From positions 186,001 to 250,000 of the IMG/VR virus record IMGVR_UViG_3300020473_000010: a DNA stretch of 64,000 bases; one strand, written 5' to 3'. This document shows, in pieces, positions 16,638 through 55,862 of this stretch. The notes beneath the pieces are model-generated. The model was not told the DNA's origin and did not search any database. It worked only from the letters and a program-made list of their open reading frames with translations. The position numbers were made by a program, and so were the translations under genes. Position 1 is the stretch's first letter; every line of letters starts with the position of its first letter.

Positions 16638-19484
16638 TTACCATGAAACCGATTGGTTGTCATCTTCTTCGCTCTCTTCATCGTCATCATCATTCTCATT
16701 ATTTGTGCTAGAATTATTATCGTCATTATCGTCATTGTCTTCGTCGTTATCACTGTATTGATCCGTTGAAGCCCCAACTAGATTTGCTGTTTCTGCTAAT
16801 TTACTAGTAAGTTGTTGATACCATTGTGAATTATTTAAAGCATCTACCATATCCTGATATTCTTCAGCTTCTTTTTGAGCTATTTCTTCATCGGACATCC
16901 AGCCCTCCGGAGTAGTATTTGGCATTGAATCTACATCATAAACCAACTCAGTAGGAATACCTACATGGAATTCTTTTGCTGCTATTACATAGTTTGTTGG
17001 CATATACCAATTGTCGACACTGGGATTACCTTCTGATTCTTTCCAACCAAAGATTTTTATTACATATTCTATTCTTGTGTCTGGCCAATATTCCGGGAGA
17101 CCATAAGAATTTGTGACATCTTCTTGGGATTCAAGCAAGTGTAAATAATGGTGCCAACGAAAGATGGTTGGTGAAAGCCAGTCTGCAATATATATGTCCT
17201 TTTCTGTAATTGCAAATTTTCCTATTAAAATTTCATTAGCTGGGATTTGCTGACCAAGTGAATGATGAAAACCACCGGAAGAAGAATTGTTAGGAGGGCA
17301 TCTCACAGTTACAATCCCATATGATCCTGTTTGTTTTAAATAATCTGAAAGATGGATATTCATTGTTACATACTTCATTAGAAACAATTTGTCGATTGTA
17401 ACTAACTCATATTCTCTTCTTTTAAATCCATCATCGTGTATTGCAACTCGAGGATTTACTGCGTCTCTCCCTGAACTTTTTCTTTGTTTTGGTTTCCATT
17501 TAATATCTAATCTACCATCAGTAATCCCGGAAACCATATAGAAATCTTTTACATTTTCAGTGACAATAATTTCGTCATCGTATGTTAAAGCTGGCGTATC
17601 TTCAAATTCTCTTATTAGATCAAAAGTATCTGAGCTCATAGCATAACGGTTTATATTCTGGAGGGCTGATTGTTGGTCTATTAAATCGGGTGCTTCCTCT
17701 CCGGCCATTACAGCTGGGTGATGTTCATACCATGGATATCTAATTCTTTTTACTTTACGGGGTATTAAACCTAGATGATCTACATGGAGTGGTAGAAAAT
17801 TAGGGTTTTCAACCCATGCTCCGTCGACGCCATACCGGTAACCAAATTCGGCCGCAAGTGAAACTTTTGAAAGCCGAAAATTAATTCTGCTCATTCCTGA
17901 GCCTCTAGTTGATACTCTTCGGTATTTTGTTCCTGCTAAAGTGTTTGTTGAAGAATTCCATGTTCCTTTTGCGCCATCAGGACCAAATTGTTCATATCCA
18001 CCGGTCAATTCTAGAAGTTGATATCCTCCAGAGGTATCAAGATATCCATTCAATAAAATTCTTTGATTGCTAATTAAAATTTCATCATGAAATTCTTTTA
18101 CATGCAAAAAATATAGTAACGTTGAATTATTAGCCCAAGTTGATTTTGTATCTTCCCAAAAGGGATATCCTTCTTCGTTTATTGCTGTTAAATCTAGCTG
18201 ATGAGGGCTTTTGGACGCAATAAAAAAATCATCTAGATTATTAAAGTCAATAGTAATAAATTGATCATCATCATTAACTATATTCATTTTTTGCATTAAA
18301 GGAGGGCCATAAATTCTTCTATCTAAGTGAGTTGTTTGAGAAAATGACTGTCTTTCATGTTCTTTACCAAACTTTAATTGGGTATTAATAAAATTTAATT
18401 GGTACCAACTGTAATCTGTCTGTATTGTTTCTTGATAATACTTTTGCCCTGGTATTGTTGATATTTTTTTAATTACTTGAAGGCCATTGGGTTCACAAAT
18501 TTCAATTTTATCTGGGATTGTATCTGTATCAAAATAAATATAAAAATTATGATATCCAGGAATCTGTGTAGATTTTGAATCTTTATACAGTTGCATATTG
18601 CTGTTAAACTCTGTCTCTACTCTCCAGTTATACGAATAAGGACTATCTTTATAGATAAACTGTTTTTGATGATCAAAATATCCGATTTCTTTATTGTGTT
18701 TATGGTTCGATAGAATATAAACTTGACCGCCCATGGGTTCAGTCCGGGCTGGAGAATATCTGTCGTTGAGAGAAACTGTAAATCTATTTCCGATATCATC
18801 TATGTTATAATAATTTCTGCAATACAAATTTGGTATTACGTCTGGTGAGTCATCAACATAATTTATGTGATGAAATGGATTTTCTACACTTACTGATAAT
18901 AATATATTTTGATCATCTCCATCCTTTGAATTCATATATGGAATATCTTTAAAATAATCTTCATCAAAAATATATAATTCTAAAAAATCATCGGTTTCAG
19001 CTACTCCACCAATACCTGTAGTGCCATCAACAATATTAAATGGGCCTAGGCCTTGCTCATCAATCCAAGTTTCGTACCACGGAGAAGGAATCCAGTATGT
19101 TTCGAAATTATATTGAGCTCTATTAAAATAATACTTGTCTAATTCAGATAATTCATCATAATGCTGATAAGACTGAGGTAATTGGTCATCAACGAATTCG
19201 GATGGCTGTTGCAATCCAGGGGCACTATTCCACGGTACCCTTTCTAGCAACCCGATATTTGAAGCATCGAAAACCTCTAATAAACCCATGGATTGTTCCG
19301 CGGAAAAGCTTAGGGCCTGAATCTCTCCGTTGTTTCTTACGGAATTTAAAAAATCCCTAGCATTGGATCCATCAACCGCATGGGGTTCTTCTATTACAAT
19401 TGTAGTATCTTTTTTTCCCGTTATTGCCAGAGACTTATTGTTTGGCAATTTTAATATTACTGATTTTCCAGCTGGAGTTGGCAT
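16638..19484 (-). CDS. Hypothetical protein (948 aa) with an acidic low-complexity C-terminal tail
   Basis: Long ORF, TAATG-coupled to the upstream gene; ends DNDEDNDDNDDNNSSTNNENDDDDEESEEDDNQSVSW. Confidence 0.55.
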   Translation of the reverse strand: MPTPAGKSVILKLPNNKSLAITGKKDTTIVIEEPHAVDGSNARDFLNSVRNNGEIQALSFSAEQSMGLLEVFDASNIGLLERVPWNSAPGLQQPSEFVDDQLPQSYQHYDELSELDKYYFNRAQYNFETYWIPSPWYETWIDEQGLGPFNIVDGTTGIGGVAETDDFLELYIFDEDYFKDIPYMNSKDGDDQNILLSVSVENPFHHINYVDDSPDVIPNLYCRNYYNIDDIGNRFTVSLNDRYSPARTEPMGGQVYILSNHKHNKEIGYFDHQKQFIYKDSPYSYNWRVETEFNSNMQLYKDSKSTQIPGYHNFYIYFDTDTIPDKIEICEPNGLQVIKKISTIPGQKYYQETIQTDYSWYQLNFINTQLKFGKEHERQSFSQTTHLDRRIYGPPLMQKMNIVNDDDQFITIDFNNLDDFFIASKSPHQLDLTAINEEGYPFWEDTKSTWANNSTLLYFLHVKEFHDEILISNQRILLNGYLDTSGGYQLLELTGGYEQFGPDGAKGTWNSSTNTLAGTKYRRVSTRGSGMSRINFRLSKVSLAAEFGYRYGVDGAWVENPNFLPLHVDHLGLIPRKVKRIRYPWYEHHPAVMAGEEAPDLIDQQSALQNINRYAMSSDTFDLIREFEDTPALTYDDEIIVTENVKDFYMVSGITDGRLDIKWKPKQRKSSGRDAVNPRVAIHDDGFKRREYELVTIDKLFLMKYVTMNIHLSDYLKQTGSYGIVTVRCPPNNSSSGGFHHSLGQQIPANEILIGKFAITEKDIYIADWLSPTIFRWHHYLHLLESQEDVTNSYGLPEYWPDTRIEYVIKIFGWKESEGNPSVDNWYMPTNYVIAAKEFHVGIPTELVYDVDSMPNTTPEGWMSDEEIAQKEAEEYQDMVDALNNSQWYQQLTSKLAETANLVGASTDQYSDNDEDNDDNDDNNSSTNNENDDDDEESEEDDNQSVSW

Positions 19485-20434
19485 TATTGTTCCTTCCTTT
19501 TGAAAACTATAGAAAATAATCTTAAAAATTTTGGTATATCACTCGAATCTCGAAGGATATGACCAGCATAAAAAACTCTTGCAAGAGGGTTCCCAGTAGA
19601 GTCAAAAAAATCTCCGGCATCGACGATTACAAGTTTTCGGATTTTTGATGACTCTATTTCGAAAACTTGACCTAATAGATTTACCGTTAACGAACTTTTG
19701 TTAATTGTTATATTTTGATGTTGGGCTTCTGATATTAATTCGGCTTCAAGTTCTTCAAAAGTTTGAGGAGGTTTAGATATATATTTAGCGTATACACCAA
19801 TTGAGTTTCCTAATTGATCGACTGGGGGCAAATAAGACATTGCTCTAGTATTTCGAAACCGTGAATCAATAATAACTGGATTAAGAATATTTTCATTTGT
19901 GATCGTACTTTCATCTGTATATACTCTATTAAATTCTATAGCTTTAGGCCATACTTTCATTTCTGAATTGTTGAAAAATTCATCTTTTGTTTTAACAATT
20001 TTTAGATTTTTAAAATTATTAATAGATGTATCTAATGATGAAAAAGTTCCGGAATAAATATCTTGAGACCCAGTAGCAATAGCAAAAGTTTCATTGGGAA
20101 GAGCATTCATAATCGTGCCTTCCCTAATTAAGATTTTAGGTTCAATTACTACCCCAGATTCATCTGTTGCAAATACAGAACTTCTGGCAAACATCCCAAT
20201 TTGGCCAAATTCTTCAATTTCCGGAATGATTGTATCTTGAGGGCCACCAAAAGCTTCTAGTTGAATTTCATTAGAAATATCTAAAAGTTGGACTCCATCT
20301 GTTTGATAATACGCTGTTTTGTCCGTAATGCTAGCATATTTTATCTCGAACGTTCTGTTTCGAATTTGTCTTCTACCATTTGGGGTAAGAATAACATCTA
20401 AAATACGCTGCTTTGGATCTAATATACCTGCCAT
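19484..20434 (-). CDS. Putative virion structural protein (316 aa)
   Basis: N-terminus MAGILD...DVILTPNGRRQI...IKYASITD is paralogous to 7950..8591. AAGGAG SD and an ATAATTAA motif lie upstream. Confidence 0.6.
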   Translation of the reverse strand: MAGILDPKQRILDVILTPNGRRQIRNRTFEIKYASITDKTAYYQTDGVQLLDISNEIQLEAFGGPQDTIIPEIEEFGQIGMFARSSVFATDESGVVIEPKILIREGTIMNALPNETFAIATGSQDIYSGTFSSLDTSINNFKNLKIVKTKDEFFNNSEMKVWPKAIEFNRVYTDESTITNENILNPVIIDSRFRNTRAMSYLPPVDQLGNSIGVYAKYISKPPQTFEELEAELISEAQHQNITINKSSLTVNLLGQVFEIESSKIRKLVIVDAGDFFDSTGNPLARVFYAGHILRDSSDIPKFLRLFSIVFKRKEQ

Positions 20435-20452
20435 AACTTAAAACTCCTTTAT

Positions 20453-20460
20453 TTAATTAT
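20453..20460 (-). promoter_or_regulatory. Putative late promoter variant ATAATTAA
   Basis: 18 nt upstream of the ATG at 20434. The same variant occurs at 20987-20994, upstream of the ATG at 20964. Confidence 0.35.
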
Positions 20461-20486
20461 GCAATTAGTAGATTTACCATAATATT

Positions 20487-20654
20487 TCAAGTAGGAGTTC
20501 CTTCTTCGGAGTTCCATTTATTCGATCTTTTTAAAATCTCTCTTTGTTTTCTTATATTGATAGGTCGTTCACCAACTTTTTTTCTTGTTTTGTAGGTTTT
20601 CTTTGAAGAATTTTTATTTAATACAGCGATTTCAATCGCTTTTTTTTTCCTCAT
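20487..20654 (-). CDS. Small basic ORF (55 aa), or the frameshifted C-terminal extension of 20632..20964
   Basis: Manual translation: MRKKKAIEIAVLNKNSSKKTYKTRKKVGERPINIRKQREILKRSNKWNSEEGTPT*. It fills the otherwise empty gap and overlaps the upstream gene across an A9 run. Confidence 0.55.
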   Translation of the reverse strand: MRKKKAIEIAVLNKNSSKKTYKTRKKVGERPINIRKQREILKRSNKWNSEEGTPT

Positions 20655-20964
20655 CCTCGAGGATTTTGATTTTCTCTAGGACTTCTTCTAAAGTTTTAAT
20701 CTGTATTCGATAATCTCCAACATCTTTTATTGTCCCTTGCGCTGTGTCTTCTATTAAATTTATAACAGCTTGCAGGCCTTGAACTAAAAACGCAATTCTT
20801 TCATCAACAGAGCCAGTGGCGTTTGCTTTTTCCACCATCGATTGAGCAAGTTTTGCGCAGTCTATAGCTAATTTTTCAACAACGACACATGCATCATTAG
20901 ATTCTATTAAGCTGCTGTTTAAATCATTGATTTCTTTTAACACCCCTTCTTGAATTATAGACAT
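20632..20964 (-). CDS. Hypothetical helical/coiled-coil protein (110 aa)
   Basis: Strong SD (AGGAGG) and amphipathic-helix-like sequence; ends EDEEKKSD* across the A9 run. Confidence 0.7.
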   Translation of the reverse strand: MSIIQEGVLKEINDLNSSLIESNDACVVVEKLAIDCAKLAQSMVEKANATGSVDERIAFLVQGLQAVINLIEDTAQGTIKDVGDYRIQIKTLEEVLEKIKILEDEEKKSD

Positions 20965-20999
20965 AAATCCTCCTAAATATATTTTCTTAATTATGATAC

Positions 21000-21032
21000 A
21001 AAAAAAGTCGTCCGTGTAAAAACACGGACGAC
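21000..21032 (-). terminator. Rho-independent terminator downstream of the paired fibre-like genes
   Basis: Perfect 11-bp stem GTCGTCCGTGT (21007-21017)/ACACGGACGAC (21022-21032) with a 4-nt loop, followed on the minus strand by T7 (21006-21000). Confidence 0.85.
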
Positions 21033-21059
21033 ATAAATATGTTTTTCAGCTAAAAAATC

Positions 21060-23513
21060 TTACGATTTTCTATAGATTATAGAAACATTATCATCCAAAT
21101 CGATATCAAAGTTGAAAACAACATGCTCAGCACTAGAAGCACCTTGACCATAGTCATAATCTAAATCTTGACCATCATGACCACCAGTAGATGAAGCAAA
21201 AGATACATCTGCAAGAGAGGAATTTCCAGCAGACCCATTTGCAGTTCTTAACGAGAGAGGACGATCATGTCCAGTATTTGAACTTCTAGCAGCACCCCAG
21301 TCATTGAACATGCTATCAAAAGCACCTCCACCACCGGTTGCCCAACATCCTTTTGCTTGAATTGTCATTCTTACTGCAGCACCGCCTTCGTTTGCTACTG
21401 AAGCTTTATAATCTGCATCCGGATCTCCCAAAAATGGGTCGATTTCTGCTGCAAGATTTTCTAAAGCAGCAAACTGTGTTGCTCCAATATCAACTGGATA
21501 TCCATTAATAATGTCATCACATTTAATATTTAATCTGTCACCGTTTGTGTTTGATGCATCAACACCGTATTGGCCGGATTTGACAAGAAACCTTCCAGCA
21601 CGAGACGTACGAGTTGCTGTCTGGTCAGTTCTGACCCATGTGGTATCAGCACCAGATGAATCAACACCAGCAAGACAGTCGCCATCAGCAATCTTTTGGG
21701 CGCCATCAGCGCGGAGTGCACACCATTCAATTCGCGTATCATTTGCGTCTGGCTGATTAGCTCCAAATTCTAATGTTTGTGCAACAGCAGCAGTTTGGTT
21801 AAAGTTACATAAGTGAAGATATCCATCATTACTTCCTTGGATCACGCTTCGAAAAGCTCTGTAAAGCCGTAACTCTACTAAGCCTACATCACTACCTCCG
21901 GTACCAAAGTTGCTTGCTGAACCTCCAACAAATTCTATAATATCGTTATCTTTGATTTTGTCAAAAATATTTTTATGATCGCCGTTGGCATATTCAATAA
22001 CACCGCAGAGGGACTCGACATCAAACAAAAGGTTACCGCCACCGGCGTTGTTTCCAATCGCTGAATTTGGAACAGTAATAGTTTCATTAACTACAAATCC
22101 TTTACCAGGCTGAATAACTGTTACAGTTGCAGACATTCCGTTGGCGGCTGTAACGATTTGATATTTGGCGCCGACACCAGAAGATTGAGTTGTTACACCG
22201 TTTTGACCAGCTTCGACGTTGTAAGTTTGAGACGCCGGCCAGGCATTACCGCCATTTGCTTGAATACTATCAACTGATTTACAGCCAGAGTTAGAAAACT
22301 TGGAACCAGCAACATTAAGAGCTGATCTTTTATTTGTTGCATCAGCTTTTGCAATTGAATTTGGTCGATCTACATATACAAAAGTTGCACTGTCAGTTGT
22401 TTTATCAACACCCTTAGCCGATATCTTAATGTGAGATCCAGGAGTGATCAAATAACCGCTAGCGGAGCCCCCGGTAAGTAATACTTGATGATCTGCTGTA
22501 GCAGCAGCAGCAGTTCTGAAAGGGAAATCTAAAGTGCCTTTTGCTGGAAGGCCAGTTGATGAAGGTCTTAATAAAATACCATTGTGGTATATATCCATAT
22601 ATTGACTGTTTGTTCCAGTGGTTTTGAAAGTGTCAGTACCAAGATTGCTTAATGCTGATAAATTCCATTCATCCTGCATATTTCCTTGAATTCTTACTTC
22701 TCGTCCAGCTGTAATTTTATCATTAGCAGCAATTTGAATAAAACGTTTTTGACGCGTTTCTTTAACATCTAACCACTGAAGCTGTAATTCGCGATTTGAA
22801 CCATCGATAGTATTATTTGCTTGGATTGCTAATACCATGCCGGCAGCAGCTGTAGTGGAATTAGCAGGCAATTTATATCGACAGTTTCTGTTTTCTGCGT
22901 CTGCTGTACCAAAGGAAAAAGCGGCATAGTTGTCTCCGTCAGCATCTTCAAACCTAAGATTAGTATCAGATTTTATCGCAATATCATTAGCACCTAATTT
23001 TTGTAATTTATCGACTTGTAAAATACCGTCTCCGCGCAGAACCAATTTATCAGCTGCAGCAGCAGCAGAAGCTAATTTTACTGTAAAAGTTGCAACAGCA
23101 TCTGCGACTTCGGTGATTTCATTTAAGGATTCTACTTTTATTTGTGCAAAGTTGCCGGCGGCTGCAGCTTCGGAATCTTCTGTTTTAAATTTAATTGTTC
23201 CAATATCGTCACCAGCCCCTATTGAAGTATCTAGATTCGAAAACTGTAGAGTAGCGCCTCCATCGACATTTATTTGAGTGTTTGCTTGGTCCATTTGTCC
23301 AGCATTCTGATTAAACCAGTCTGATTTACCGTTAATTCTAGAAAGAGCGCGACCATATTCTTGTAAAAGGTCATTTACGTCTTGGACGTCTATGGCTGCA
23401 ACTGATGTTGAATTTTGTAAAGCATTATCCACTTTTAGAGCTAATGGGTCTGTGGAATTATGTGCCCCAAGAGTTCCAGACAAGTGCTGTAGCCTAAATT
23501 GAGTTTTATACAT
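21060..23513 (-). CDS. Fibre/decoration-like virion protein (817 aa), paralog of 23620..25764
   Basis: Ala/Gly/Asp/Thr-rich. Shares KTQxRLQ, YGxAxSRIxGKxDWFxQxAGQ, NLDTS...GDDIG, KLASxAAAA and PGSHIK, and the C-terminal F.FD...DD...YR, with its neighbour. Confidence 0.65.
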   Translation of the reverse strand: MYKTQFRLQHLSGTLGAHNSTDPLALKVDNALQNSTSVAAIDVQDVNDLLQEYGRALSRINGKSDWFNQNAGQMDQANTQINVDGGATLQFSNLDTSIGAGDDIGTIKFKTEDSEAAAAGNFAQIKVESLNEITEVADAVATFTVKLASAAAAADKLVLRGDGILQVDKLQKLGANDIAIKSDTNLRFEDADGDNYAAFSFGTADAENRNCRYKLPANSTTAAAGMVLAIQANNTIDGSNRELQLQWLDVKETRQKRFIQIAANDKITAGREVRIQGNMQDEWNLSALSNLGTDTFKTTGTNSQYMDIYHNGILLRPSSTGLPAKGTLDFPFRTAAAATADHQVLLTGGSASGYLITPGSHIKISAKGVDKTTDSATFVYVDRPNSIAKADATNKRSALNVAGSKFSNSGCKSVDSIQANGGNAWPASQTYNVEAGQNGVTTQSSGVGAKYQIVTAANGMSATVTVIQPGKGFVVNETITVPNSAIGNNAGGGNLLFDVESLCGVIEYANGDHKNIFDKIKDNDIIEFVGGSASNFGTGGSDVGLVELRLYRAFRSVIQGSNDGYLHLCNFNQTAAVAQTLEFGANQPDANDTRIEWCALRADGAQKIADGDCLAGVDSSGADTTWVRTDQTATRTSRAGRFLVKSGQYGVDASNTNGDRLNIKCDDIINGYPVDIGATQFAALENLAAEIDPFLGDPDADYKASVANEGGAAVRMTIQAKGCWATGGGGAFDSMFNDWGAARSSNTGHDRPLSLRTANGSAGNSSLADVSFASSTGGHDGQDLDYDYGQGASSAEHVVFNFDIDLDDNVSIIYRKS

Positions 23514-23567
23514 ATTTTTTCTCCAAAATATTTTATAAGATTAAGATTATAACTTTCTCAAACATCC

Positions 23568-23606
23568 TTAGGAAAGGCCCGTACTTTGTACGGGCACAAA
23601 ACCTAA
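23568..23606 (-). promoter_or_regulatory. Intergenic RNA hairpin (possible weak terminator or processing/stability element)
   Basis: GCCCGTAC-TTT-GTACGGGC (23577-23595), with possible outer pairing TTAGG (23568-72)/CCTAA (23602-06). Only CTTT follows on the minus strand. Confidence 0.55.
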
Positions 23607-23619
23607 AGACGACTACGGT

Positions 23620-25764
23620 TTATTGTCTATAAACCACGCATAAGGTATCATCGATTTCAAGGTCAAAAGCAAAAACAATGTAAGAATTGCCTGATCCTCC
23701 AACACCATAATCACCATTCAGTGCAACGCCGCCAGCAACTACTGGGCCGAATGTACCACCAGTAAGTGCTACATCTGAGTTTGCATTTGCATCTCTTAAT
23801 GATATAGGATTTGCGAAAGAAGTAATAGCGCCATTATCCGGAGCAACACCTTGAAGATTTCTTTGTGAAGTGAATGTAAGATCGCTAGCAGTAGCAACTT
23901 TATATCTTCCAGCAGTAATTGTACAATCAGCGCGATTTCCATCGATTGCAGTTGCTGCAGAATGGAAAGTTTTGTCTGCGGTACCTGCCCAAAGGCCTGT
24001 TTTACCAAGAGCAACTGCCAAGGCATCCCAAGCATTCTTTTGTGTAATAGTATTTGAAGCCAACGTGATGTCTTGAGCATTACAGACATCAACAGCAATT
24101 GCGCCGATGATATCGTTGTGTACAACAGATAATTTCTTTGCATCATGAGATGAAACGTCGGTAGCTCCGGAGATAAGTTTATATCTCTCTGCGCCATCAT
24201 TAGCAGAACGCTGATTCGCAAGGGTTTGTGGATTAGCACTGGTACCGTAAGCTCCAGCAATACAATCACCGACCGCAAGTACATCACCTGTATGAATAGC
24301 ATAGGAAGTTAACTTGAAAGTGTGTCCACCTGTTCCTGCAGAAAGAGTGATAACAGCTTCGTCTTGGTCATCAATTTCACAAAGCTGGATTCGATCTGTA
24401 GCCGGCTTCGAGCGAATTCTGTATAGAGTGCCATTGACCAGCCCACCAGGCATGCCACTTGCAACCTGTTCAGCTAACAGAGTATCACCAACTCTTACTG
24501 CTGCCCAAAAGGTATTTGGAACGATGACTCGATCTTGGGCTGCGTCGATACCTGACGCCGCGTCAAGGTTTCCTGTTGTTCCTTCAGCGTCTGTAAATCC
24601 GGCGCCTGTTCTTCCAGCAGCTCCTGCCAAGATAGAAGAGTATCTATCAACAAAACAGAAAGTTTTATTTTCGTCATAAAGGGTTACCTTGATGTGAGAA
24701 CCAGGCACGACTGGATATACATCGCCGTCTCTGTTTTGAGCTGTTCCACCAATAGCTACTGTAGCATCTTGATCGGGGCAACGGATATCTAAAGTTCCTC
24801 GAGCGTGACTGGTGTTTGAAGGCTGAAGATATTGACCGTTAACATAAATATCTAATCTTTGTTGTTCACTATTGCCGGAGACCATAGAACCTGCAGCAAT
24901 ATCTGGAGTTAAAGCAAGGTTATAACCGGTGGCTCCATCTAAATCAAATTCAACACCAGCTCTGACGTCGTTTGAGGCGCTAATTGTTAGGAATTTTTTC
25001 TGTACTGGATCGGCTGCTGTAATCCAGTCTAATTGGACTGTTGTTAAAGGGTCACCAGAGTCAGTTGAACTAATACCTAAAAGCTGGTTTGCTGATGCTG
25101 TTGAACTGTCGGCTGGTAATTTTAAGATAACACTTTTTGTTGTGTTAGCAGAGTAATCCCAAGCAGCATAGTGAGAATCATCACTGTCATACATCCGAAG
25201 TAAAGTGTCTCCTTTTACAGATATATCACCAGTACTAGTTAATTCTTGTAATTTATCAATTTTTAATGTACCATCGTGGGTTAAGCGCAACTTTTCTGCG
25301 GCTGCTGCACCACTGGCCAATTTAATGCTCATTTCTGCTTTTGCATCCCCAACGGAGCCGATGGCGTTAGAAACTTGCTCTACATATAATTGAGCGAAAT
25401 CGGCAGCAGCGCCGGCTTCTGAATCAGCAGTTGTCCATTTAATAAGACCTATATCATCACCAGTATTCACGGAAGTGTCTAAGTTTCTTAAAGTGATTTG
25501 TGGAGCTGAAGCATTTCTAATATCTAAATTATGAGTAAATTGTCCTGCAGCTTGGGAGAACCAGTCTCCTTTTCCTGAGATACGAGAAATTGCATTACCA
25601 TATTGTTGTAATATTCCTGCCAAGTCGCCTACGTCGATTGCTTCAGCGGCAGCGGCAGCGGGGAGGGCACCATCTGTATTAGCTTTAATTGCATAATCGC
25701 GAGAGTCGCCACTAGCAGCTAAAGATCCAGTCACGGCCTGTAATCTAATTTGTGTTTTAGCCAT
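23620..25764 (-). CDS. Fibre/decoration-like virion protein (714 aa), paralog of 21060..23513
   Basis: Same shared motifs as its paralog, and a similar TTTTGGAGAA ribosome-binding context. Confidence 0.65.
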   Translation of the reverse strand: MAKTQIRLQAVTGSLAASGDSRDYAIKANTDGALPAAAAAEAIDVGDLAGILQQYGNAISRISGKGDWFSQAAGQFTHNLDIRNASAPQITLRNLDTSVNTGDDIGLIKWTTADSEAGAAADFAQLYVEQVSNAIGSVGDAKAEMSIKLASGAAAAEKLRLTHDGTLKIDKLQELTSTGDISVKGDTLLRMYDSDDSHYAAWDYSANTTKSVILKLPADSSTASANQLLGISSTDSGDPLTTVQLDWITAADPVQKKFLTISASNDVRAGVEFDLDGATGYNLALTPDIAAGSMVSGNSEQQRLDIYVNGQYLQPSNTSHARGTLDIRCPDQDATVAIGGTAQNRDGDVYPVVPGSHIKVTLYDENKTFCFVDRYSSILAGAAGRTGAGFTDAEGTTGNLDAASGIDAAQDRVIVPNTFWAAVRVGDTLLAEQVASGMPGGLVNGTLYRIRSKPATDRIQLCEIDDQDEAVITLSAGTGGHTFKLTSYAIHTGDVLAVGDCIAGAYGTSANPQTLANQRSANDGAERYKLISGATDVSSHDAKKLSVVHNDIIGAIAVDVCNAQDITLASNTITQKNAWDALAVALGKTGLWAGTADKTFHSAATAIDGNRADCTITAGRYKVATASDLTFTSQRNLQGVAPDNGAITSFANPISLRDANANSDVALTGGTFGPVVAGGVALNGDYGVGGSGNSYIVFAFDLEIDDTLCVVYRQ

Positions 25765-25878
25765 TTTTTATTCTCCAAAAAATGTTTAGTTTATTCTTGT
25801 TTGAGACGAAAACTCTATACTGTCCAAACGATCTTAATAATTTTAATTAAACCAAAAACATAAATTGGGATTTCAACT

Positions 25879-25886
25879 TTAAATAT
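25879..25886 (-). promoter_or_regulatory. Putative late promoter ATATTTAA upstream of the 714/817-aa pair
   Basis: Variant of the ATATTTAT motif in the intergenic region, about 115 nt before the ATG at 25764. Confidence 0.35.
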
Positions 25887-25921
25887 GCAGCTCAAGCTGA
25901 AAAACTAAAAAAAATAAAACT

Positions 25922-26149
25922 TTAATTTCTATATAAAATCTTCTTTAAATTTCTAACATGATTATCGTAAACTGCACATTCACTACCAGTAAATTCTATA
26001 GCGAACTGAGCACCTTTTCCGTCAGGATCCGCAAACTCAAACATAAATTGGCCATTAGAAGAACGAAACGCATTTAACAACTTTAGGCCTTTCATCATTA
26101 GAAAAGCTGCTATCGATAAGTCCGATGTTTTATAAACGTTATTTTTCAT
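25922..26149 (-). CDS. Small DUF5659-like protein (75 aa), possibly DNA-binding
   Basis: YKTSDLSIAAFLMMKG.KL...FMFEF.D resembles the DUF5659 pattern (from memory). GAGG SD and ATATTTAT lie upstream. Confidence 0.55.
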   Translation of the reverse strand: MKNNVYKTSDLSIAAFLMMKGLKLLNAFRSSNGQFMFEFADPDGKGAQFAIEFTGSECAVYDNHVRNLKKILYRN

Positions 26150-26169
26150 ATCTTTTATTTACCTCAAGT

Positions 26170-26177
26170 ATAAATAT
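26170..26177 (-). promoter_or_regulatory. Putative late promoter motif ATATTTAT
   Basis: 20 nt upstream of the ATG at 26149. Confidence 0.5.
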
Positions 26178-26243
26178 GTAGTTAGTTAAGAACATCTCAT
26201 TCTATTTGTCGCAATGAGGTTTCAAATTTAATATGGTGACAAT

Positions 26244-27323
26244 TTAAAATACTATAATTAAAATACTGTCACCTTTAGTAATGCTCGTATTAAAATCTAT
26301 TTCATTATCCGATACAAGTTGATAATCATAAGAAGATCCGGATCTTAAATGCTGTCCGTTTAATAAAACATCTATTCTTGAAGGGTCGTAATTAACTGTT
26401 GAGAAATCCAGAGGAGAACAAGAAAAATTATCTCCTGGAGCATAGGATGTAGATGCTTCAAAATAGGTTTTTACTCTATTTGTTTTAAATAGCACCGTGT
26501 CAGATCCAGCGTCTGTAGTAATAGAAATTCCAGATCCAGCTGAAAAAGTTAGAGTGTCTGTTGCAGAATCCGCAACTACGCTTGTTTGCCCAGTGACAGA
26601 CAAAGTTTTAAAAGCTTGGTTAACAGATCCACCACCTCCACCACCCCCGCTTAAGGAAGACAGGCTTTCGTTGAGCATCTTCCCAACATATAAAAACCCT
26701 CTTGCATGTGCAGGAATTTTTGTAGAATCATAATCTTGTAAAAATAAAACGCCGTTATAATAATCAATTGACCAATCAATTTCGTCTAACAGTGGTATTT
26801 CCGATCCAACCCCACCTGATCCGTCATCTCTGTATATTTTTAAAATATATGGATTAGGAGATTGCCCAGAAAAATTTGGTGGAACAATTTGAGCTGCCCC
26901 AATAGTTTCATATAAAACTTTATCATTATCAAAAACGCCGTTTCCTTCATTCGGGTTTGATGATAGAGTTGTATAATTTGATGGCAGTGCTAATTTATAA
27001 CAATGAGGGCCGGCATCCTGTGGTTTCTGTACTTTAGAATCGGAATCCCAGTCATTAGAATTATAAGTTGATCCGCTTATTTGCAAAACTTGAAATTGAA
27101 CATATTCTACTGTATTTGGGGTTGACCCGCCGGCGTTCTGAAGAGCCCACAAAGTTCTACTTGGGTTATCCGGTACATCTTCCCCAAAAATAGTTTGTGC
27201 ACCAATTGTAATATTTGAACCAATTGATTCTTCTGAATCGGATTTTACTATTGATGTGTTTGCTTTTCCAAATAATTTCTTTTGGGCAAATAATGTTGCT
27301 GATAAATTACTTTTTCCTGCCAT
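26244..27323 (-). CDS. Virion structural/fibre-associated protein (359 aa)
   Basis: WSIDYYNGVLFLQD motif, a poly-Gly linker, an AFKTLSVTGQ..VVADS..DTL module shared with the 1871-aa ORF, and a C-terminal IDVLLNGQ.L...DY domain. Confidence 0.6.
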   Translation of the reverse strand: MAGKSNLSATLFAQKKLFGKANTSIVKSDSEESIGSNITIGAQTIFGEDVPDNPSRTLWALQNAGGSTPNTVEYVQFQVLQISGSTYNSNDWDSDSKVQKPQDAGPHCYKLALPSNYTTLSSNPNEGNGVFDNDKVLYETIGAAQIVPPNFSGQSPNPYILKIYRDDGSGGVGSEIPLLDEIDWSIDYYNGVLFLQDYDSTKIPAHARGFLYVGKMLNESLSSLSGGGGGGGSVNQAFKTLSVTGQTSVVADSATDTLTFSAGSGISITTDAGSDTVLFKTNRVKTYFEASTSYAPGDNFSCSPLDFSTVNYDPSRIDVLLNGQHLRSGSSYDYQLVSDNEIDFNTSITKGDSILIIVF

Positions 27324-27334
27324 AATAAACCGCC

Positions 27335-30300
27335 TTAGCTATAAGCCACTGTTATCCCTGAAATATAGCCTGTCCAGTTTTCGTGTGCTATGATACTAAT
27401 TATGAAGTACTCGGGAGATGAAGCGGTTCCATTAACAGTTTGTCCATTAAAAGTACAAATATTTGAAGCGCCGGAAGGATCGATAGCAGCATCTAAAGAC
27501 CCATATAAACCGCCGTCGCCGTCGGTGATATTTCCATCGCCCTCAGAATCTTTTGCTACATCCATCCAACCGGTTTTTCCAGGGATTTTTGCCAATAAAT
27601 GAATATTTTTATTTGCACCTATAGTACCAGCATAGGAGCCTGTTTGACCAACCAGTGTTGCATCTCCAGCAATTGTTATTGTTACACGCGGGGTATCTGT
27701 TGTAGTGTTATTTTTAAACCTTCTTATATAGTGTCTTGTTGATCGGCCACCTAGATTGGTATAATTCACATTGCTTAAAGGAGATGTCATATTGGTTGCT
27801 CCTGAATTTTCAGATGTATCTCTAAAATCTCCATTAAAAGGCCCTTTTTTAGGAGAGATTAATTTTCCATTATAAATTAACAAACCTGTTGAATATGGAG
27901 CGTAGGATGTTGAATTCATTGTTATTTGAGAGTTCCATCCGTTTCCGGAAATAACAGAAGCTTGATTACCGTAGCTACCCGATTGCAATCTCTGGGTTTC
28001 TTGTACAAAATTTTCTGTTGTATTAATATTAGAAGAATCACTTCCGGAATATACTAAGAAACTATTTTTCGTTTGAGAGGAAAGAGTTCCATTTGATTTT
28101 AGTGGATGTTTTATAGTGGCTGATACTGCAGCATTATGGGCTGTTCCTCCTGCGATGGTTGAATTTGGGAGAGAGCTGGGTTTATTAAATGTTAAAGAAG
28201 CAATTACATTTAAAGTTTGGTTCTGAGGATTTGCAACAGTAGTATCTAAAAGAGGTAATGACATAGATGATGCGTTATTAAAACTATTTACTACACCTGA
28301 TCCTTGAGCATCAACCCGAGTGATATTAAAGTTTGAATCATTTGTAATTGAAATAGCGTTGGTTTTTGAAGAGCAAACATTTTCATAGCAGTTATCAACT
28401 GCAAACGCTAAAGTTCCTGTAGGGTTTGCAGAGAAATATTTTACTCCACTTTGGTAATAAGTTTCTGCAGATGAAAATGTAGAGAAAGTTGGAGATGAGG
28501 TTGATATATCGTTTGTCTGTCCTAAAGTATCATTAATCCATTCTATATAATTTGTTTCTCTATCTGCTTGCCCAGAGATGGAATGGACAACCCGAGCATA
28601 ATTCCATCCATTACGCTGATCGTCGGGGTGGATCTTATAAGAAGCGGTTCTGTACCAATATCTAAAATCTGGCAGATTATCACCATCTTTTCCGTTTAAC
28701 GCTCTTGTGATATTATGAAATCCTGTTCGGTTATTTGAACAAAGACTTTCAGTTTTGGAAATACCTAAAATTACTAAATCATCTAAATCTGCTGTTGCAA
28801 GGAGAGATCCATTAACATATAATTTTAAAACGCCTTCATTGCCTTGTCGAAAGGCTAATGCTGGGAAATTATTTCCTGATCCACTTTCGTGAGAATTTAC
28901 CTCACCATCGATTGTTACATTTCCTTTAAATATTGCCATTCTAAGATTGTTGGCGGAAGTGGCTGTTCCAAAAGTTCCGTTGATATCAACTACCGGAGAG
29001 AAACCGGCTGTGGTATCATGTTTTTCATAACCGGTAATTGTTTTAGACGCCCCAAAGGAAAGTCTTCCTTCTTTACCGTTAGTATCGTTGCAGTCAATTC
29101 TTTCAACTTTTGGAGCATGTGAAACCGCGGTTACTCCAACAGCCGGGAATGTAACCGTCATATCCTCGAGAAACCCAGTCCAACCAGCAGGTGCTTCAAC
29201 TGCAATCACTACTGAGTCGTTATGCGCGACTGTGGTTGTTCCAAAACTGAAATGATTAGTAGCACTAAAGTTTGAAGAGAGTGAGCCTATATAGCCACCA
29301 GAGCCATAAGAAGACGAATTATAAATAAATGGCTTTGCTAAATCCATCCAGTCCGTTGAACCTGGAATTCTAGCAGCAATTTTAATATTAGTATTTCCCA
29401 TGGCTGAATCTAAATTAACAAGGGATGTTCCGTTTGCAGTAATTGCTAAATGAAAATCTCGAACCGGGTTTGAGGATTCGTTTTTAAATGCCCGGAAAAA
29501 AGTTTTAGTACCAGAATTTAAAGAGCTATAATTTGGATTTCCAGAATAGGCATTTGCTAAAGAACCGCCGTCCGTAGTGTTTCGAAAATCTCCAGAATTT
29601 AAAGTATTAATTGCTGAAAATAATTTATCGTTATAAAATATTAGGCCGTCTGCTTGGTTTGCAGATCCGGATAAGTGTAAATTGTTATTCCAACCATTTG
29701 ATGCTATATCTCCTTGGGCTCCGTATGAAGCGCTAACTAGTCTTTTATTTTCCATCCTAAAAGATTCATACTGATCTGTAGAATTATTTGTTACATTATA
29801 GATTAAAAATCCAGTTGCTGAGGTAGAGCCGCCATTTGACAAGTTTTTTGACTCAAATGGGTGTGTAACATTGACAGCTGCGCTACACGTTCCTCCAAAC
29901 TGGCCAGATAAATTAATATCCATAGCCCGGTTAATATTGATTATTTTTGTGTGGGTTTCGCCAGAAGATAGTGAAGGTTTGGGAGATATTGAAGATATAG
30001 AACAATTTGTAGTTGTGAATGTTATATCATCATTATTATAAATGTATTTATAAGCATTTTCAACATTGACTTTATAATTTGCAGTAGCATCAGTTGCATA
30101 TCTTATACCAGAAATTGCTACATTGCCGGTTAAAGTTATATCTGTTATTTGGTTTGATGTTGCTGCAATCGCCTCTGCGTTCGAATCATTAACCCATTCT
30201 ATATAATTTGTTTCAATATCGGGCTGACCCGATATTGAATGAACGACCCGAGCATAATTCCAGCCATTACGTTGATCAGATGTCCCGATTTGGTATTTTC

Positions 30301-51186: not shown

Positions 51187-51472
51187 CTATTTGGTTCTCC
51201 TCGTTTTCTATTTTTGCAATTTCGTTTGCGACTCTGAGAATTGAATCTCTTGAATCCTTAATGTCATTTATAACTTGCCTAATTTGTGGAGAATCATAAA
51301 ATATTGGGATTTCTAAAATTTTTGATACACTAGAATAGCGATCATCTAGAATATCTAAACTTGTTTCTAATGAATCTGTAATTTTTAATATTATATTTGC
51401 AAATTTATAATTATAATATAACGAAACTATTAACGCTATAGAAATTATCGCTAATAACCAATTTATTATCAT
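51173..51472 (-). CDS. Small membrane-anchored hypothetical protein (99 aa)
   Basis: N-terminal hydrophobic helix followed by a coiled-coil-like region. Confidence 0.6.
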   Translation of the reverse strand: MIINWLLAIISIALIVSLYYNYKFANIILKITDSLETSLDILDDRYSSVSKILEIPIFYDSPQIRQVINDIKDSRDSILRVANEIAKIENEENQIDERP

Positions 51473-52620
51473 GTATGATCTCTTAAAAATTTATCGTATA
51501 ATTCTGATATAGCTTCCTGGGAATATTTTTGCCTTATTACTTTTCCTAATTTACTAGACCAGGTTTCCGGGATGGATGTTCCTTTTTTATAAAATTTATA
51601 AATCCTTTCGGATAAATGCCTAAAATCAATCTCTGCCCAAGAGGAACCTTGGATCCAGATATTGTTATCAACTCTTGAATCTGGTATATTTTTTAAATTA
51701 TATGAAACGGACAACCATTTACCTTTGTTTAAAAACTCGCAATGAGCTGACCAGTTAGTCGCAATAACTGGCAAATTACAAGCTGCGGCTTCTAGCATGG
51801 GGAGACCAAACCCTTCTCCTCTTGTACCGGAAAGTAATGCTTTAACTTTTTTGTTTTTATATAATCCCGAGATTTCACTCTCCGATAAGGCACCGTGAAT
51901 TAAATATACTTTTGGATATTGACCGTCTCTTACTTGGTTAATTAAATTAGATAAATTTCTTCTAGTAATCCTCCTATCAATGGCGCAATTTCTTCCGGAA
52001 TTTGTTTTTATTATTAAACCAACTTCTTTGTTGTCTTTAAAAGTATTACAGAAAGTTGCTATTGTATTATACGTATTTTTCCTGTCATCTTCCTGAGATC
52101 CAGTTAATTGTCCTAAAAGTAAAAAATTAAAATCTGTTTTAATTTCCGGCATAGAAAAATCATTATCGTTTAAGCACTCTGAAATAAAACTTTCCGGAAT
52201 AACTGAAATATTTTCAGATTCGGCACCTGAATTAACTAATACTTTTTTCGAAAATTCAGATGGAACGATAACATGATCCATGTTTTTGCAATTTTCTATC
52301 CATCCTGGATTGCATTTTGTTGCTTCTACTACAGCCGTGACTCCAAAATTCCGCTCTGCAAGATTAGGATCCCACTCATTTGGTAGTTGGATTTGAAAAG
52401 AAATATTTGGTTTAATAATTGGAGGAGCTGATCTTTCCATTATTTCTCCAATTAGGCCATTTAGGTCATCCGGGTTGCAATACCACGGAGTAATTCCCCA
52501 TGGGGTAACTGAAACTGAAATCAAATATTTTTTTTCTAATGCCCATTTAAAAATCTGTCTGGCATGTACACCATAGCCAGACTGAGTTAAAAGCGGGCCT
52601 CGGATATGAATATGTTTCAT
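51469..52620 (-). CDS. Glycosyltransferase, GT4-like (GT-B)
   Basis: SGYGVHAR; IVPSEFSK; RKN; TRGEGFGLPMLEAAACNLPVIATNWSAH. Confidence 0.9.
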   Translation of the reverse strand: MKHIHIRGPLLTQSGYGVHARQIFKWALEKKYLISVSVTPWGITPWYCNPDDLNGLIGEIMERSAPPIIKPNISFQIQLPNEWDPNLAERNFGVTAVVEATKCNPGWIENCKNMDHVIVPSEFSKKVLVNSGAESENISVIPESFISECLNDNDFSMPEIKTDFNFLLLGQLTGSQEDDRKNTYNTIATFCNTFKDNKEVGLIIKTNSGRNCAIDRRITRRNLSNLINQVRDGQYPKVYLIHGALSESEISGLYKNKKVKALLSGTRGEGFGLPMLEAAACNLPVIATNWSAHCEFLNKGKWLSVSYNLKNIPDSRVDNNIWIQGSSWAEIDFRHLSERIYKFYKKGTSIPETWSSKLGKVIRQKYSQEAISELYDKFLRDHT

Positions 52621-53873: not shown

Positions 53874-54720
53874 TACAATGCTCCGTATTTTTAAATGAAC
53901 AGAATTTACAACTGTTATAATTTTTTAAAGTAAATCCCTTTTTTACGTTTTTAATCATGCTTTCAACTAATTTGTCGGTTTTTTCAAGAAATTTTGGCCC
54001 AGTAGAAACTTTAAAGATTTCACATGTAGAACCTAAAGGAGCTCCGCGTTTTAAGAAAACGAAAGCTGTTTTGATATCTTTTAAGTCAACCTGAGATTTT
54101 TCAGACCAATATTTTTTGTAGAGCCCAACCTGAGCCAAGGATGAAAATTCTTTTTTCTTTTGATAATACCATCCATTTTTACCGGTAGTTTTCCAATCTA
54201 AAATCCAAAAGTTTACTTTGTTTGAAGTTTTGGATTTTGGCGTCATTATAACGCAATCTATAAATCCTTTAAATTTTAAATCGAAATTATTTATAGGCTG
54301 ATATAAATCGTCTTCTGCTTTTAAAATTTCCCAACCTGGAAATGTTTCATCCATGAACTTTGGAAAGTCTGATAAAATATTTTTAGAAGATTGGATCCAA
54401 TCATTTAAATACTCGTGGGTATATTTAGATCCAATTGTAGCTCTTGATTCTGTAATTTTCTTAATATATTCGTGTGAATCGTATTGTTTAAGTTGCCACC
54501 TTTGAGTAATTTTTTTTCCTACATTTTCAATTGAAATATCATTTCCGTTTAAATATTTCTCTATTTCTTCATGGATGATTGTTCCAAAATCAGCGTATGG
54601 ATTATCTTCATATGTTTCTATTTTGTCAACATACATTAGCTTATGCCTATATGAACACTCTTTCCAGGCTTTTAGTTCGGAATAAGATATATGCGGTTTA
54701 CCGGTTGGAAAATTACTCAT
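53857..54720 (-). CDS. PD-(D/E)XK exonuclease (AddB/Cas4/RecB-like) with a probable Fe-S Cys staple
   Basis: HISYS...EC; GTIIH; KGFID; LDWKT; C-terminal CKFC.....C. Confidence 0.85.
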   Translation of the reverse strand: MSNFPTGKPHISYSELKAWKECSYRHKLMYVDKIETYEDNPYADFGTIIHEEIEKYLNGNDISIENVGKKITQRWQLKQYDSHEYIKKITESRATIGSKYTHEYLNDWIQSSKNILSDFPKFMDETFPGWEILKAEDDLYQPINNFDLKFKGFIDCVIMTPKSKTSNKVNFWILDWKTTGKNGWYYQKKKEFSSLAQVGLYKKYWSEKSQVDLKDIKTAFVFLKRGAPLGSTCEIFKVSTGPKFLEKTDKLVESMIKNVKKGFTLKNYNSCKFCSFKNTEHCSGNGW

Positions 54721-54766
54721 TTTTTGTATACCTCTCTAAATAAAGATACTCCTAAGTTTAAAGAAG

Positions 54767-55789: not shown

Positions 55790-55833
55790 ATTTTATTTGT
55801 AGTGAAAGGTTTGTTGAAGTTTTGCCAATTCTA

Positions 55834-55862
55834 ATTTTATCTAGTCTATACCATTTGTACAA
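55834..55862 (-). promoter_or_regulatory. Sigma70-like promoter upstream of gmd
   Basis: TTGTAC (55862-55857), a 17-nt spacer and TAAAAT (55839-55834), in a 75-nt intergenic gap. Confidence 0.45.

What the first reader, a model, noticed from the sequence alone, without database searches (positions are those of the whole stretch)
20487..20660. A9 run with an adjacent hairpin joining two overlapping ORFs: candidate programmed frameshift or transcriptional slippage
Seen on the minus strand: GAGGATGAGG-AAAAAAAAA-GCGAT-TGAA-ATCGCT. The 110-aa ORF stops at a TGA inside the loop of the AGCGAT/ATCGCT hairpin. The +1 (equivalently -2) frame stays open for 50 more codons of very basic sequence (...KTRKKVGERPINIRKQR...), whereas the -1 frame closes after KRLKSLY. 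SD-like GAGG copies directly precede the run. Established: runs of 9 or more A promote RNA polymerase slippage, internal SDs stimulate ribosomal frameshifting, and phage tail chaperones use frameshifts to make short and long forms. Alternatives: an independent 55-aa gene from ATG 20654 with a poorly spaced SD, a homopolymer assembly error, or a plus-strand terminator (hairpin plus T-tract) silencing antisense RNA.
Basis: partly seen in the sequence, partly recalled or inferred. Interest (0 to 1): 0.65.

Follow-up and report, generated by a model that had tools for sequence, protein, structure and literature searches.

The report
Conserved poly-A recoding site, jumbo phage
A run of nine A's near the end of a small jumbo-phage gene is a conserved recoding site, most likely RNA-polymerase slippage, that lets some molecules carry an extra ~50-residue basic tail encoded in another reading frame.

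Summary
ORF110 (20632-20964, minus strand) ends just after an A9 run (20640-20648). The +1 frame stays open for 50 more codons.

- **Not an assembly error:** eight contigs from different samples and assemblers read A9 identically.
- **Context:** the window lies in a 288.7-kb phage genome, in its baseplate/fibre gene block.
- **Conserved run:** 21 diverged syntenic relatives keep an A8-A10 run at the same Glu-Lys-Lys position.
- **Conserved tail:** the shifted frame encodes a peptide with the motif K-x-R-x-K-[VI]-G-E-R-P-I. It varies mostly at third codon positions.
- **Frame offset:** 18 lineages need +1 and 3 need -1. None is in frame. Several have no start codon for the tail.
- **Natural fusions:** more distant relatives encode both parts in one 156-189-aa ORF. 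Profile comparison gives 97% probability, colinear.

So a fused product of about 158 aa is made by programmed recoding. Mixed shift direction, run length and the lack of conserved stimulators favour transcriptional slippage over ribosomal frameshifting. No RNA data could confirm this.

The hairpin and the GAGG motifs are not conserved. The gene is not at the tail-chaperone position, and its function is unknown.

The parts
20632..20964 (-). ORF110, the zero-frame short product (110 aa). Predicted as an antiparallel helical hairpin (helices 3-22, 25-49, 53-109). The long last helix ends at the recoding site.
   Evidence: 47 homologues of 98-136 aa; pLDDT 96
20969..20974 (-). AGGAGG Shine-Dalgarno sequence, 4 nt before the ORF110 ATG (20962-20964)
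   Evidence: read directly from the sequence
20640..20648 (-). A9 run, the recoding site. Zero frame reads GAG GAA AAA AAA AGC GAT TGA. One A fewer, or two more, in the mRNA puts the extension in frame.
20487..20639 (-). +1-frame extension: 50 codons plus stop, AIEIAVLNK...EEGTPT. The conceptual fused product is 158 aa with junction ...EDEEKK-AIEIAVLNK.
20538..20591 (-). Conserved core of the extension, KTRKKVGERPINIRKQRE. Family motif: [FI][KR][ST]R.[KR][VIL]G[EQ][RK]P[ILV].[ILV]..QR.
   Evidence: (per-codon-position differences 0.44/0.33/0.57)
20652..20654 (-). ATG that opens ORF55 as called by gene finders. GAGG abuts it with no spacing. It is not conserved in relatives, so it is probably not the way the extension is expressed.
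   Evidence: L011, L109 and L116 have no start codon
20625..20640 (-). 6-bp hairpin AGCGAT-TGAA-ATCGCT directly 3' of the run (-6.6 kcal/mol). Lineage-specific and probably not part of the conserved mechanism. On the plus strand it reads as hairpin + T9, like a terminator.
19484..20434 (-). Downstream 316-aa gene of the 'MAGIL...' family, used as the synteny anchor for relatives. Function unknown.
21007..21032 (-). Strong intrinsic terminator (11-bp stem + T7) between the 817-aa gene and ORF110. ORF110 therefore starts a new transcription unit or a read-through unit.

Best explanation
ORF110 and the overlapping +1 ORF are one recoded gene of a marine jumbo phage.

**Products.** Standard decoding gives a 110-aa helical-hairpin protein. 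A fraction of the product instead changes frame at the A9 run. It continues for 50 more residues, giving a protein of about 158 aa with a basic tail that carries the conserved K-x-R-x-K-V-G-E-R-P-I motif.

**Mechanism.** The most likely mechanism is programmed transcriptional realignment. RNA polymerase stutters on the T9 template and makes a mixture of A8, A9, A10 and A11 mRNAs. Ordinary translation of the A8 or A11 species yields the long form.

**Shown:** the run, the shifted-frame peptide and the out-of-frame arrangement are conserved and selected. In-frame fusions exist in distant relatives.

**Inferred:** that the shift happens at the RNA level rather than on the ribosome; the ratio of the two forms; and that both forms are needed. 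The likely role is in baseplate or fibre assembly, with the tail acting as a tether to a second partner.

My odds are about 0.9 that a recoded fusion is made by some mechanism. They are about 0.6 that the mechanism is transcriptional.
For: **Conserved site**
- 21 distinct syntenic loci carry an A8 (4), A9 (16) or A10 (1) run at the same Glu-Lys-Lys site. The peptide downstream is homologous in a shifted frame.

**Selection on the shifted frame**
- The peptide changes mostly at third codon positions (0.57, against 0.44 and 0.33 at positions 1 and 2). Arg, Gly, Pro and Ser codons vary synonymously.
- ORF55 scores as coding better than 65 of 66 same-strand spurious ORFs.

**Never in frame**
- None of the 21 split lineages is in frame.
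- All 47 ORF110 homologues in a 1.8-billion-protein search are 98-136 aa.

**Natural fusions**
- Twelve natural single-ORF homologues (156-189 aa) sit upstream of the same neighbour gene. They align colinearly with the conceptual fusion: hhalign 97.2%, E 3.6e-11, 137 columns.
- The N-terminal part alone gives E 1.1e-6 and the C-terminal part alone E 1.4e-6.

**No separate start**
- There is no conserved start codon for the extension. The shifted frame often has a stop 1-4 codons before the run.

**For the transcriptional level**
- Shift direction differs among orthologues: 18 need +1 and 3 need -1. L112 (+1) and L113 (-1) are sisters, and L011 (-1) is nested among +1 forms. This is the published criterion for transcriptional realignment as against ribosomal frameshifting (PMC3711429, section 10).
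- Runs of 9 A or T are the classic efficient slippage length (PMC5009743).
- There is no conserved 5' Shine-Dalgarno sequence or 3' structure.
- The unused third frame stops sooner than expected: median 4 codons against 9, p 8e-4.
Against: - There is no RNA evidence. The only RNA runs from the source sample hold none of this sequence, and all runs are kept as contigs.
- A ribosomal -1 or -2 slip with perfect re-pairing is sterically possible on every one of these runs. Sequence alone therefore cannot exclude it.
- The A8 runs in three or four lineages are at the lower edge of slippage efficiency for bacterial RNA polymerase (PMC6260861).
- AAA and GAA make up 85% of Lys and Glu codons in this genome, so part of the run's conservation comes for free.
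- The third-frame statistic uses loci that are not phylogenetically independent.
- Neither product has been shown to exist, and the host is unknown.
Confidence: 0.6

Rival explanations
1. The same fused product is made by programmed ribosomal frameshifting on the A-run. In this window the shift would be +1, or a -2 tandem slip of two Lys-tRNAs (GA-A AAA AAA to A1-A6). In the minority lineages it would be -1.
For: - A_AAA_AAA-type heptamers are established slippery sites (PMC3711429).
- On every locus the run is long enough for perfect re-pairing after a -1 or -2 slip.
- In L011 the run is followed directly by a TAG stop, which is a pausing context.
- This window has a 3' hairpin.
Against: - Direction is not conserved among orthologues. 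Published surveys find it conserved for ribosomal cases (PMC3711429).
- No 3' structure or 5' Shine-Dalgarno sequence is conserved. Mean z of downstream folding is -0.55.
- The window's hairpin starts at the last A of the run, with zero spacer. That is too close for a classical stimulator.
- No conserved rare or stop codon follows the run in the +1 loci.
- Ribosome sliding on poly-A is weak at A9-A10 and robust only from A11 (PMC4363877).
Confidence: 0.28
2. ORF55 is an independent small gene. It would be translated from ATG 20654, or by termination-reinitiation coupled to ORF110, to give a free 55-aa basic protein.
For: - An ATG exists in the window and in its two closest relatives (L104, L009).
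- Gene callers annotate a 53-55-aa ORF.
- The ORF110 stop lies 20 nt downstream of that ATG.
Against: - GAGG abuts the ATG with no spacer.
- L011, L109 and L116 have no ATG, GTG or TTG before the conserved motif. In several loci a stop in that frame lies 1-4 codons before the run.
- Distant homologues carry the same motif fused in frame to the N-terminal domain.
- The A-run would have no reason to be conserved.
Confidence: 0.05
3. There is no programmed event. On this view the gene is broken: a frameshift mutation was fixed and the tail is decaying. Alternatively, it switches at the DNA level by replication slippage (phase variation).
For: - Poly-A tracts are also slippery for DNA polymerases (PMC3711429).
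- Some lineages have lost the tail altogether (L105, L108, L127, L175, L176).
- L019 has a truncated tail.
Against: - The tail is under purifying selection across 20 loci whose neighbour proteins are only about 30% identical.
- None of the 21 lineage consensus sequences is in the 'on' (in-frame) state.
- Eight assemblies of this phage from different samples all read A9.
- Raw reads were not available, so minority DNA variants are not excluded.
Confidence: 0.04
4. The hairpin plus T9 is primarily a plus-strand intrinsic terminator that stops antisense transcription. The open +1 frame would then be incidental.
For: The consensus scan lists AGCGATTTCAATCGCT + TTTTTTTT on the plus strand as terminator-like.
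Against: - The run is conserved in 20 other lineages that have no adjacent hairpin.
- The stem is weak (6 bp, 3 G-C pairs).
- Terminator-like hits in the region are no more frequent than in shuffles: 10 against 7.5 +/- 2.7.
- This does not explain the conserved peptide.
Confidence: 0.03

Closest known systems
Programmed transcriptional realignment at A/T runs (Thermus thermophilus dnaX A9; IS630-family and other IS transposases; Shigella spa13/mxiE; Citrobacter tssM)
   Same: - A homopolymer of 8-10 A at the junction of two overlapping frames, conserved among orthologues.
- A trans-frame C-terminal extension.
- Orthologues that need opposite shift directions, as in IS630 (PMC3711429).
- Run length at the known threshold for efficient slippage (PMC5009743).
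   Different: - The gene family is new: an uncharacterised helical protein in the baseplate/fibre block of uncultured marine jumbo phages.
- Slippage itself is not demonstrated here.
- The polymerase involved, host or phage, is unknown. No RNA polymerase was found in the genome by Pfam.
Phage tail assembly chaperone frameshift (lambda G/GT, P2 E/E+E', HK97)
   Same: - The logic is the same: a small late-gene product is made in a short form and a C-terminally extended form that share an N-terminus.
- Sizes are similar to P2 E and E+E' (91 and 142 aa, from my own knowledge). Here they are 110 and 158 aa.
   Different: - The gene is not between the tube and tape-measure genes. The tube-like gene is about 48 kb away.
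- There is no sequence or profile similarity to chaperone families.
- The site is a poly-A run with mixed direction, not a phased -1 heptamer.
- The fold is a generic coiled-coil hairpin.
Nascent-RNA hairpin-stimulated slippage (Roseiflexus IS630, T5C5 motif)
   Same: In relative L009 an 11-bp hairpin (-15.5 kcal/mol) ends 3 nt 5' of the A9 run. It sits in a lineage that needs a one-base deletion. That geometry and outcome match what is described for Roseiflexus (PMC5009743).
   Different: - The hairpin is not conserved. The window's own 5' structure is insignificant (z -1.1), and most loci have none.
- An A9 run needs no stimulator.

Membership tests
Programmed transcriptional realignment (slippage) site | Homopolymeric A or T run of about 8 or more at the frame junction | tested here: met
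   A9 at 20640-20648. Relatives carry A8 (4 loci), A9 (16) or A10 (1).
Programmed transcriptional realignment (slippage) site | Run and out-of-frame arrangement conserved among orthologues, with the downstream frame encoding a conserved peptide | tested here: met
   21 loci, none in frame. Purifying selection acts on the shifted frame. Natural fusions exist in distant relatives.
Programmed transcriptional realignment (slippage) site | Orthologues need not keep the same shift direction (criterion of PMC3711429) | tested here: met
   18 loci need +1 and 3 need -1. The flips are nested within the +1 clade.
Programmed transcriptional realignment (slippage) site | mRNA population heterogeneous in run length while the DNA is homogeneous | not testable with these tools
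   Only contigs are served. RNA runs X11-X13 hold no part of the stretch.
Programmed ribosomal frameshift (-1 / +1) | Slippery site in the right phase for tRNA re-pairing | tested here: met
   -1 or -2 re-pairing is perfect on all runs. There is no canonical +1 context (hungry or stop codon) in the +1 loci.
Programmed ribosomal frameshift (-1 / +1) | Conserved stimulator (3' stem-loop or pseudoknot at 5-9 nt, or 5' Shine-Dalgarno-like sequence) | tested here: not met
   Downstream folding has mean z -0.55 over 21 loci. GAGG-like sequence occurs in 11 of 21. The window's hairpin has zero spacer.
Programmed ribosomal frameshift (-1 / +1) | Shift direction conserved among orthologues | tested here: not met
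   Mixed +1 and -1.
Tail assembly chaperone pair (G/GT type) | Gene lies between the tail tube and tape-measure genes | tested here: not met
   Sheath at genome 159.3-164.2 kb and tube-like gene at 158.5 kb. This locus is at 206.5 kb, among baseplate and fibre-like genes.
Tail assembly chaperone pair (G/GT type) | Sequence or profile similarity to known chaperone families | tested here: not met
   No PHROG hit and no Pfam hit above the curated cut-off (one sub-threshold TPR_ESP1 match) for ORF110 or ORF55. PDB profile search gives only coiled-coil noise. Fold searches give nothing at E 0.001 or better.
Tail assembly chaperone pair (G/GT type) | Two products sharing an N-terminus, the longer one made by a frameshift near the 3' end | tested here: inconclusive
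   The architecture fits, but the products have not been observed.
Independent small protein gene | Own start codon with a properly spaced ribosome-binding site, conserved in orthologues | tested here: not met
   The ATG is present only in the window, L104, L009 and L118. GAGG spacing is zero. There is no start in L011, L109 or L116.

The most novel reading that the evidence does not exclude
[quoted passage not shown] I found no such case described for a phage in my limited literature searches. Because slippage gives both insertions and deletions, lineages can flip between needing +1 and -1 without losing expression. The family has explored three solutions for setting the dose of one basic tail: recoded, fused and tail-less. 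That makes it a functional analogue of the G/GT chaperone pair, evolved independently in jumbo-phage baseplate or fibre assembly.
Probability: 0.4. Interest if true: 0.65.

Novelty: new member of a known kind. Interest (0 to 1): 0.55.

Why it matters
- **Annotation.** Gene callers split this gene into a 110-aa protein and an orphan 55-aa protein, or drop the second. That happens in every assembly of a whole clade of uncultured marine jumbo phages. The true proteome includes a fused form of about 130-158 aa.
- **Mechanism.** The family is a clean natural test bed for telling transcriptional from ribosomal recoding. The same site has +1 and -1 versions, A8, A9 and A10 versions, versions with and without a 5' hairpin, and in-frame and tail-less controls.
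- **Biology.** The pattern suggests that the stoichiometry of a small basic tail matters for assembly of large contractile tails.

Tried and rejected
**Searches for relatives that found nothing useful**
- DNA and protein searches of 50,697 deposited phage genomes found no relative.
- Single-protein locus search in IMG/VR found nothing.
I anchored on the neighbouring gene instead.

**Function**
- PHROG gave nothing for ORF110, ORF55 or the neighbouring 316-, 948-, 817-, 714- and 2009-aa proteins; Pfam gave only one sub-threshold match (PF25110 TPR_ESP1, E 0.0017, 18 bits against a cut-off of 27) for ORF110.
- The ESM Atlas gave nothing useful.
- The model of the 316-aa neighbour was mediocre (pLDDT 63). 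It had no convincing fold match: best Foldseek E 0.065 and best Z 3.9.
- ORF110 folds confidently, but only into a generic coiled-coil hairpin. The hits were Rad50 and APC coiled coils, all with E above 0.1.
- The PDB profile search gave only coiled-coil noise.

**Reads**
- The first run search failed.
- The second found only contig-level runs. Three metatranscriptomes from the source sample contain nothing from this stretch, so run-length heterogeneity in DNA or RNA could not be measured.

**Rejected leads**
- The 2166-aa hit P0049 of the large search is a beta-rich MBG-repeat secreted protein. It scored by summing twelve weak repeats and is not a relative.
- The window's 5' 'UCCUC...GAGGA' pairing next to the run is not significant (z -1.1).
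- Tail-chaperone identity is rejected on gene position.

**Not run**
- No complex prediction was run, because I make no specific binding claim.
- No alternative genetic code was used.

Full report
**1. What is in the sequence**

On the minus strand, ORF110 (20632-20964) starts 4 nt after an AGGAGG. It lies just downstream of a strong terminator at 21007-21032. It ends ...CTC GAG GAT GAG GAA AAA AAA AGC GAT TGA.

The nine A's occupy 20640-20648. The last A and the next 15 bases form AGCGAT-TGAA-ATCGCT, and the stop codon lies in the loop. This hairpin folds at -6.6 kcal/mol, z -3.2.

The +1 frame (ATG AGG AAA AAA AAA GCG ATT...) runs to 20487 and gives the 55-aa ORF that gene finders call. The -1 frame stops after KRLKSLY.

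**2. It is not an artefact and not a chance run**

ORF110 is encoded letter for letter on 19 public contigs. Eight of them, from different samples and assemblers, are 100% identical to the window over 281 bases around the run, A9 included. The contig of a further run shows no difference.

The window is bases 186001-250000 of a 288,697-bp virus record rated 96% complete. In that genome only two homopolymers reach 9 bases. The other lies between genes. The genome tolerates 41 runs of eight.

A codon-usage score puts ORF55 above 65 of 66 spurious same-strand ORFs of similar length. It also falls at about the 7th percentile of real coding segments. That is suggestive on its own but not decisive.

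**3. Context**

Almost all genes are on the minus strand. Upstream in the transcription direction lie a gp25-like and a gp6-like baseplate wedge gene, then six very large proteins. After these come two paralogous 714- and 817-aa proteins.

Downstream lie a 316-aa protein beginning MAGIL, then 948-aa and 2009-aa proteins, then replication genes. Tail sheath and tube genes lie about 42-48 kb away, at genome 158.5-164.2 kb.

No RNA polymerase was found by Pfam. Very divergent phage enzymes could escape that search.

**4. Relatives decide the question**

Word-based search found only ORF110 itself. Because that left the protein open, I used the exhaustive search. It returned 47 true homologues, all 98-136 aa and none about 160 aa. 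Their alignment shows a conserved Glu-Lys-Lys near the C-terminus, followed by tails of 0-20 residues that are not alike.

The 316-aa neighbour has many homologues. I used it as an anchor and fetched loci from assemblies, IMG/VR and JGI metagenomes.

Twenty-six distinct loci carry an ORF110-family gene upstream of the MAGIL gene. Twenty-one of them have an A8 (4), A9 (16) or A10 (1) run exactly at the Glu-Lys-Lys site.

In 20 of those, a shifted frame downstream encodes a peptide that aligns with the window's. The twenty-first, L019, has a truncated tail. The consensus is [FI][KR][ST]R.[KR][VIL]G[EQ][RK]P[ILV].[ILV]..QR.

Across 20 loci, pairwise differences in that frame are 0.44, 0.33 and 0.57 at codon positions 1, 2 and 3. 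Arg, Gly, Pro and Ser are encoded by different synonymous codons in different loci. That is the signature of a translated, selected sequence.

**5. The tail is not a separate gene**

The shifted frame has no ATG, GTG or TTG before the motif in L011, L109 and L116. It often has a stop 1-4 codons before the run. In the window the ATG is abutted by GAGG with no spacer.

Outside the split clade, twelve loci have a single ORF of 156-189 aa directly upstream of the MAGIL gene. Its C-terminal part carries the same motif, for example ...RRKPGERPVSIKNKR... and ...KRKVGKRPPITLSKYR....

Profile-profile comparison of the conceptual fusions with these natural proteins gives 97.2% probability and E 3.6e-11. 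It covers 137 colinear columns, 13-150 against 21-165. The N-terminal parts alone give E 1.1e-6 and the C-terminal parts alone give E 1.4e-6.

A third architecture also exists. It has a short form only, with no run and no tail, and lies 39-55 nt from the MAGIL gene (L175, L176; L105, L108 and L127 are also tail-less).

On a tree of the neighbour protein the split loci form one well-supported clade (support 100). Tail-less forms are nested inside it and fused forms lie outside (quick tree).

**6. Which mechanism**

Eighteen split lineages need a +1 change: one A fewer or two more. Three need -1: L011, which was confirmed in a second assembly, L012, plus L113 and L165.

L113 (-1) is sister to L112 (+1). 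Their tails are clearly homologous, and a single extra base just after the run accounts for the difference. L011 is nested among +1 forms.

A survey of prokaryotic frame transitions found that direction is conserved among orthologues for ribosomal frameshifts. It found that direction varies for confirmed transcriptional realignment, and it used this as its criterion (PMC3711429, section 10).

Runs of 9 A or T slip efficiently in bacterial RNA polymerase. They give a ladder of transcript lengths (PMC5009743).

Neither the 3' hairpin nor the GAGG copies are conserved. Downstream folding has mean z -0.55. GAGG-like sequence occurs in 11 of 21 loci, simply because Glu and Asp codons precede the run. 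Ribosome sliding on poly-A is weak at A9-A10 (PMC4363877).

The unused third frame terminates sooner than off-frames normally do: median 4 codons against 9, p 8e-4 with 18 non-independent loci. That is expected if wrong-way slippage products are made and must be kept short.

Against a firm conclusion, a -1 or -2 tandem slip of Lys-tRNAs would re-pair perfectly on every run. A8 is marginal for bacterial polymerase (PMC6260861). No RNA data exist here.

I put transcriptional slippage at about 0.6 and ribosomal frameshifting at about 0.3.

**7. What the protein is**

With 48 sequences, ORF110 is predicted with pLDDT 96 as three helices (3-22, 25-49, 53-109). They form a long antiparallel hairpin, and the last helix ends at the recoding site.

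Fold and profile searches return only generic coiled coils. The tail is basic and probably extended.

Position in the genome points to a role in baseplate or fibre assembly. This is inference.

The logic resembles the tail-chaperone G/GT pair. Membership fails on gene position and on similarity.

**8. Verdict**

This is a real, conserved, programmed recoding site in a new gene family. It is a new member of a known kind. The proposed hairpin and Shine-Dalgarno stimulators and the tail-chaperone analogy do not.

- Read laying was given 2,501 letters.
- No other genetic code was invoked.

Noticed in passing
L009:1-7954 (NCBI GCA_002170535.1, contig NHDW01000006.1, 305,838 bp): The closest relative, whose neighbour protein is 72% identical, is deposited as a contig of a 'Methylococcaceae bacterium TMED69' genome bin. 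Its gene content here matches the jumbo phage, so it is probably a phage contig binned as a bacterium, or a weak host hint. Its 53-aa tail ORF is not annotated there.
   Followed up: partly
L009:3256-3287: An 11-bp hairpin (-15.5 kcal/mol, z -4.75) ends 3 nt 5' of that phage's A9 run. This is the geometry reported to stimulate deletion-type slippage in Roseiflexus IS630. It is absent or insignificant in the window and in most other loci.
   Followed up: partly
window 20625-20634 (protein P0002): One NCBI record (an 817-nt contig) lists a 116-aa version of ORF110 that reads the TGA as Trp and runs on to the next TAA. This is either an annotation made under another code or a point variant.
   Followed up: no
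window 21060-23513 and 23620-25764, minus strand: The 817-aa and 714-aa proteins are paralogues that appear to share an Ala-rich N-terminal region (by eye, not aligned) and differ at the C-terminus. The relatives L009, L010 and L013 have a single copy of about 690-720 aa preceded by a DUF5659 gene. No family or fold match was found. They may be fibre-like proteins with swapped distal parts.
   Followed up: partly
genome G000:C1 about 19,800-28,000 (outside the window): At least 15 paralogous ORFs of 50-70 aa begin MK[VI]GD[LM]V and are arranged in tandem. This is an expanded small-protein family of unknown role.
   Followed up: no
genome G000:C1:158488-164229 (outside the window): Two sheath-like matches lie in very long ORFs (1053 and 1534 aa), next to a 163-aa tube-like ORF. 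These would be unusually large or duplicated sheath proteins.
   Followed up: no
window 51469-57070, minus strand: A sugar-modification block: two group-1 glycosyltransferases, a PD-(D/E)XK nuclease, a GDP-mannose 4,6-dehydratase (E 6e-128) and a DegT-type aminotransferase (E 1.5e-72).
   Followed up: no
L019:1501 upstream region (IMGVR_UViG_3300010883_000038): This split-clade member has an A8 run. Its +1 tail stops after 'KFVRPI', inside the conserved motif. The tail may be decaying there, or a second shift may be needed.
   Followed up: no
protein P0049 (2166 aa), hit: A giant MBG-repeat protein with a type IX secretion signal scored E 3e-17 against ORF110 by summing twelve weak repeat matches. 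It is a false positive of the large search.
   Followed up: yes
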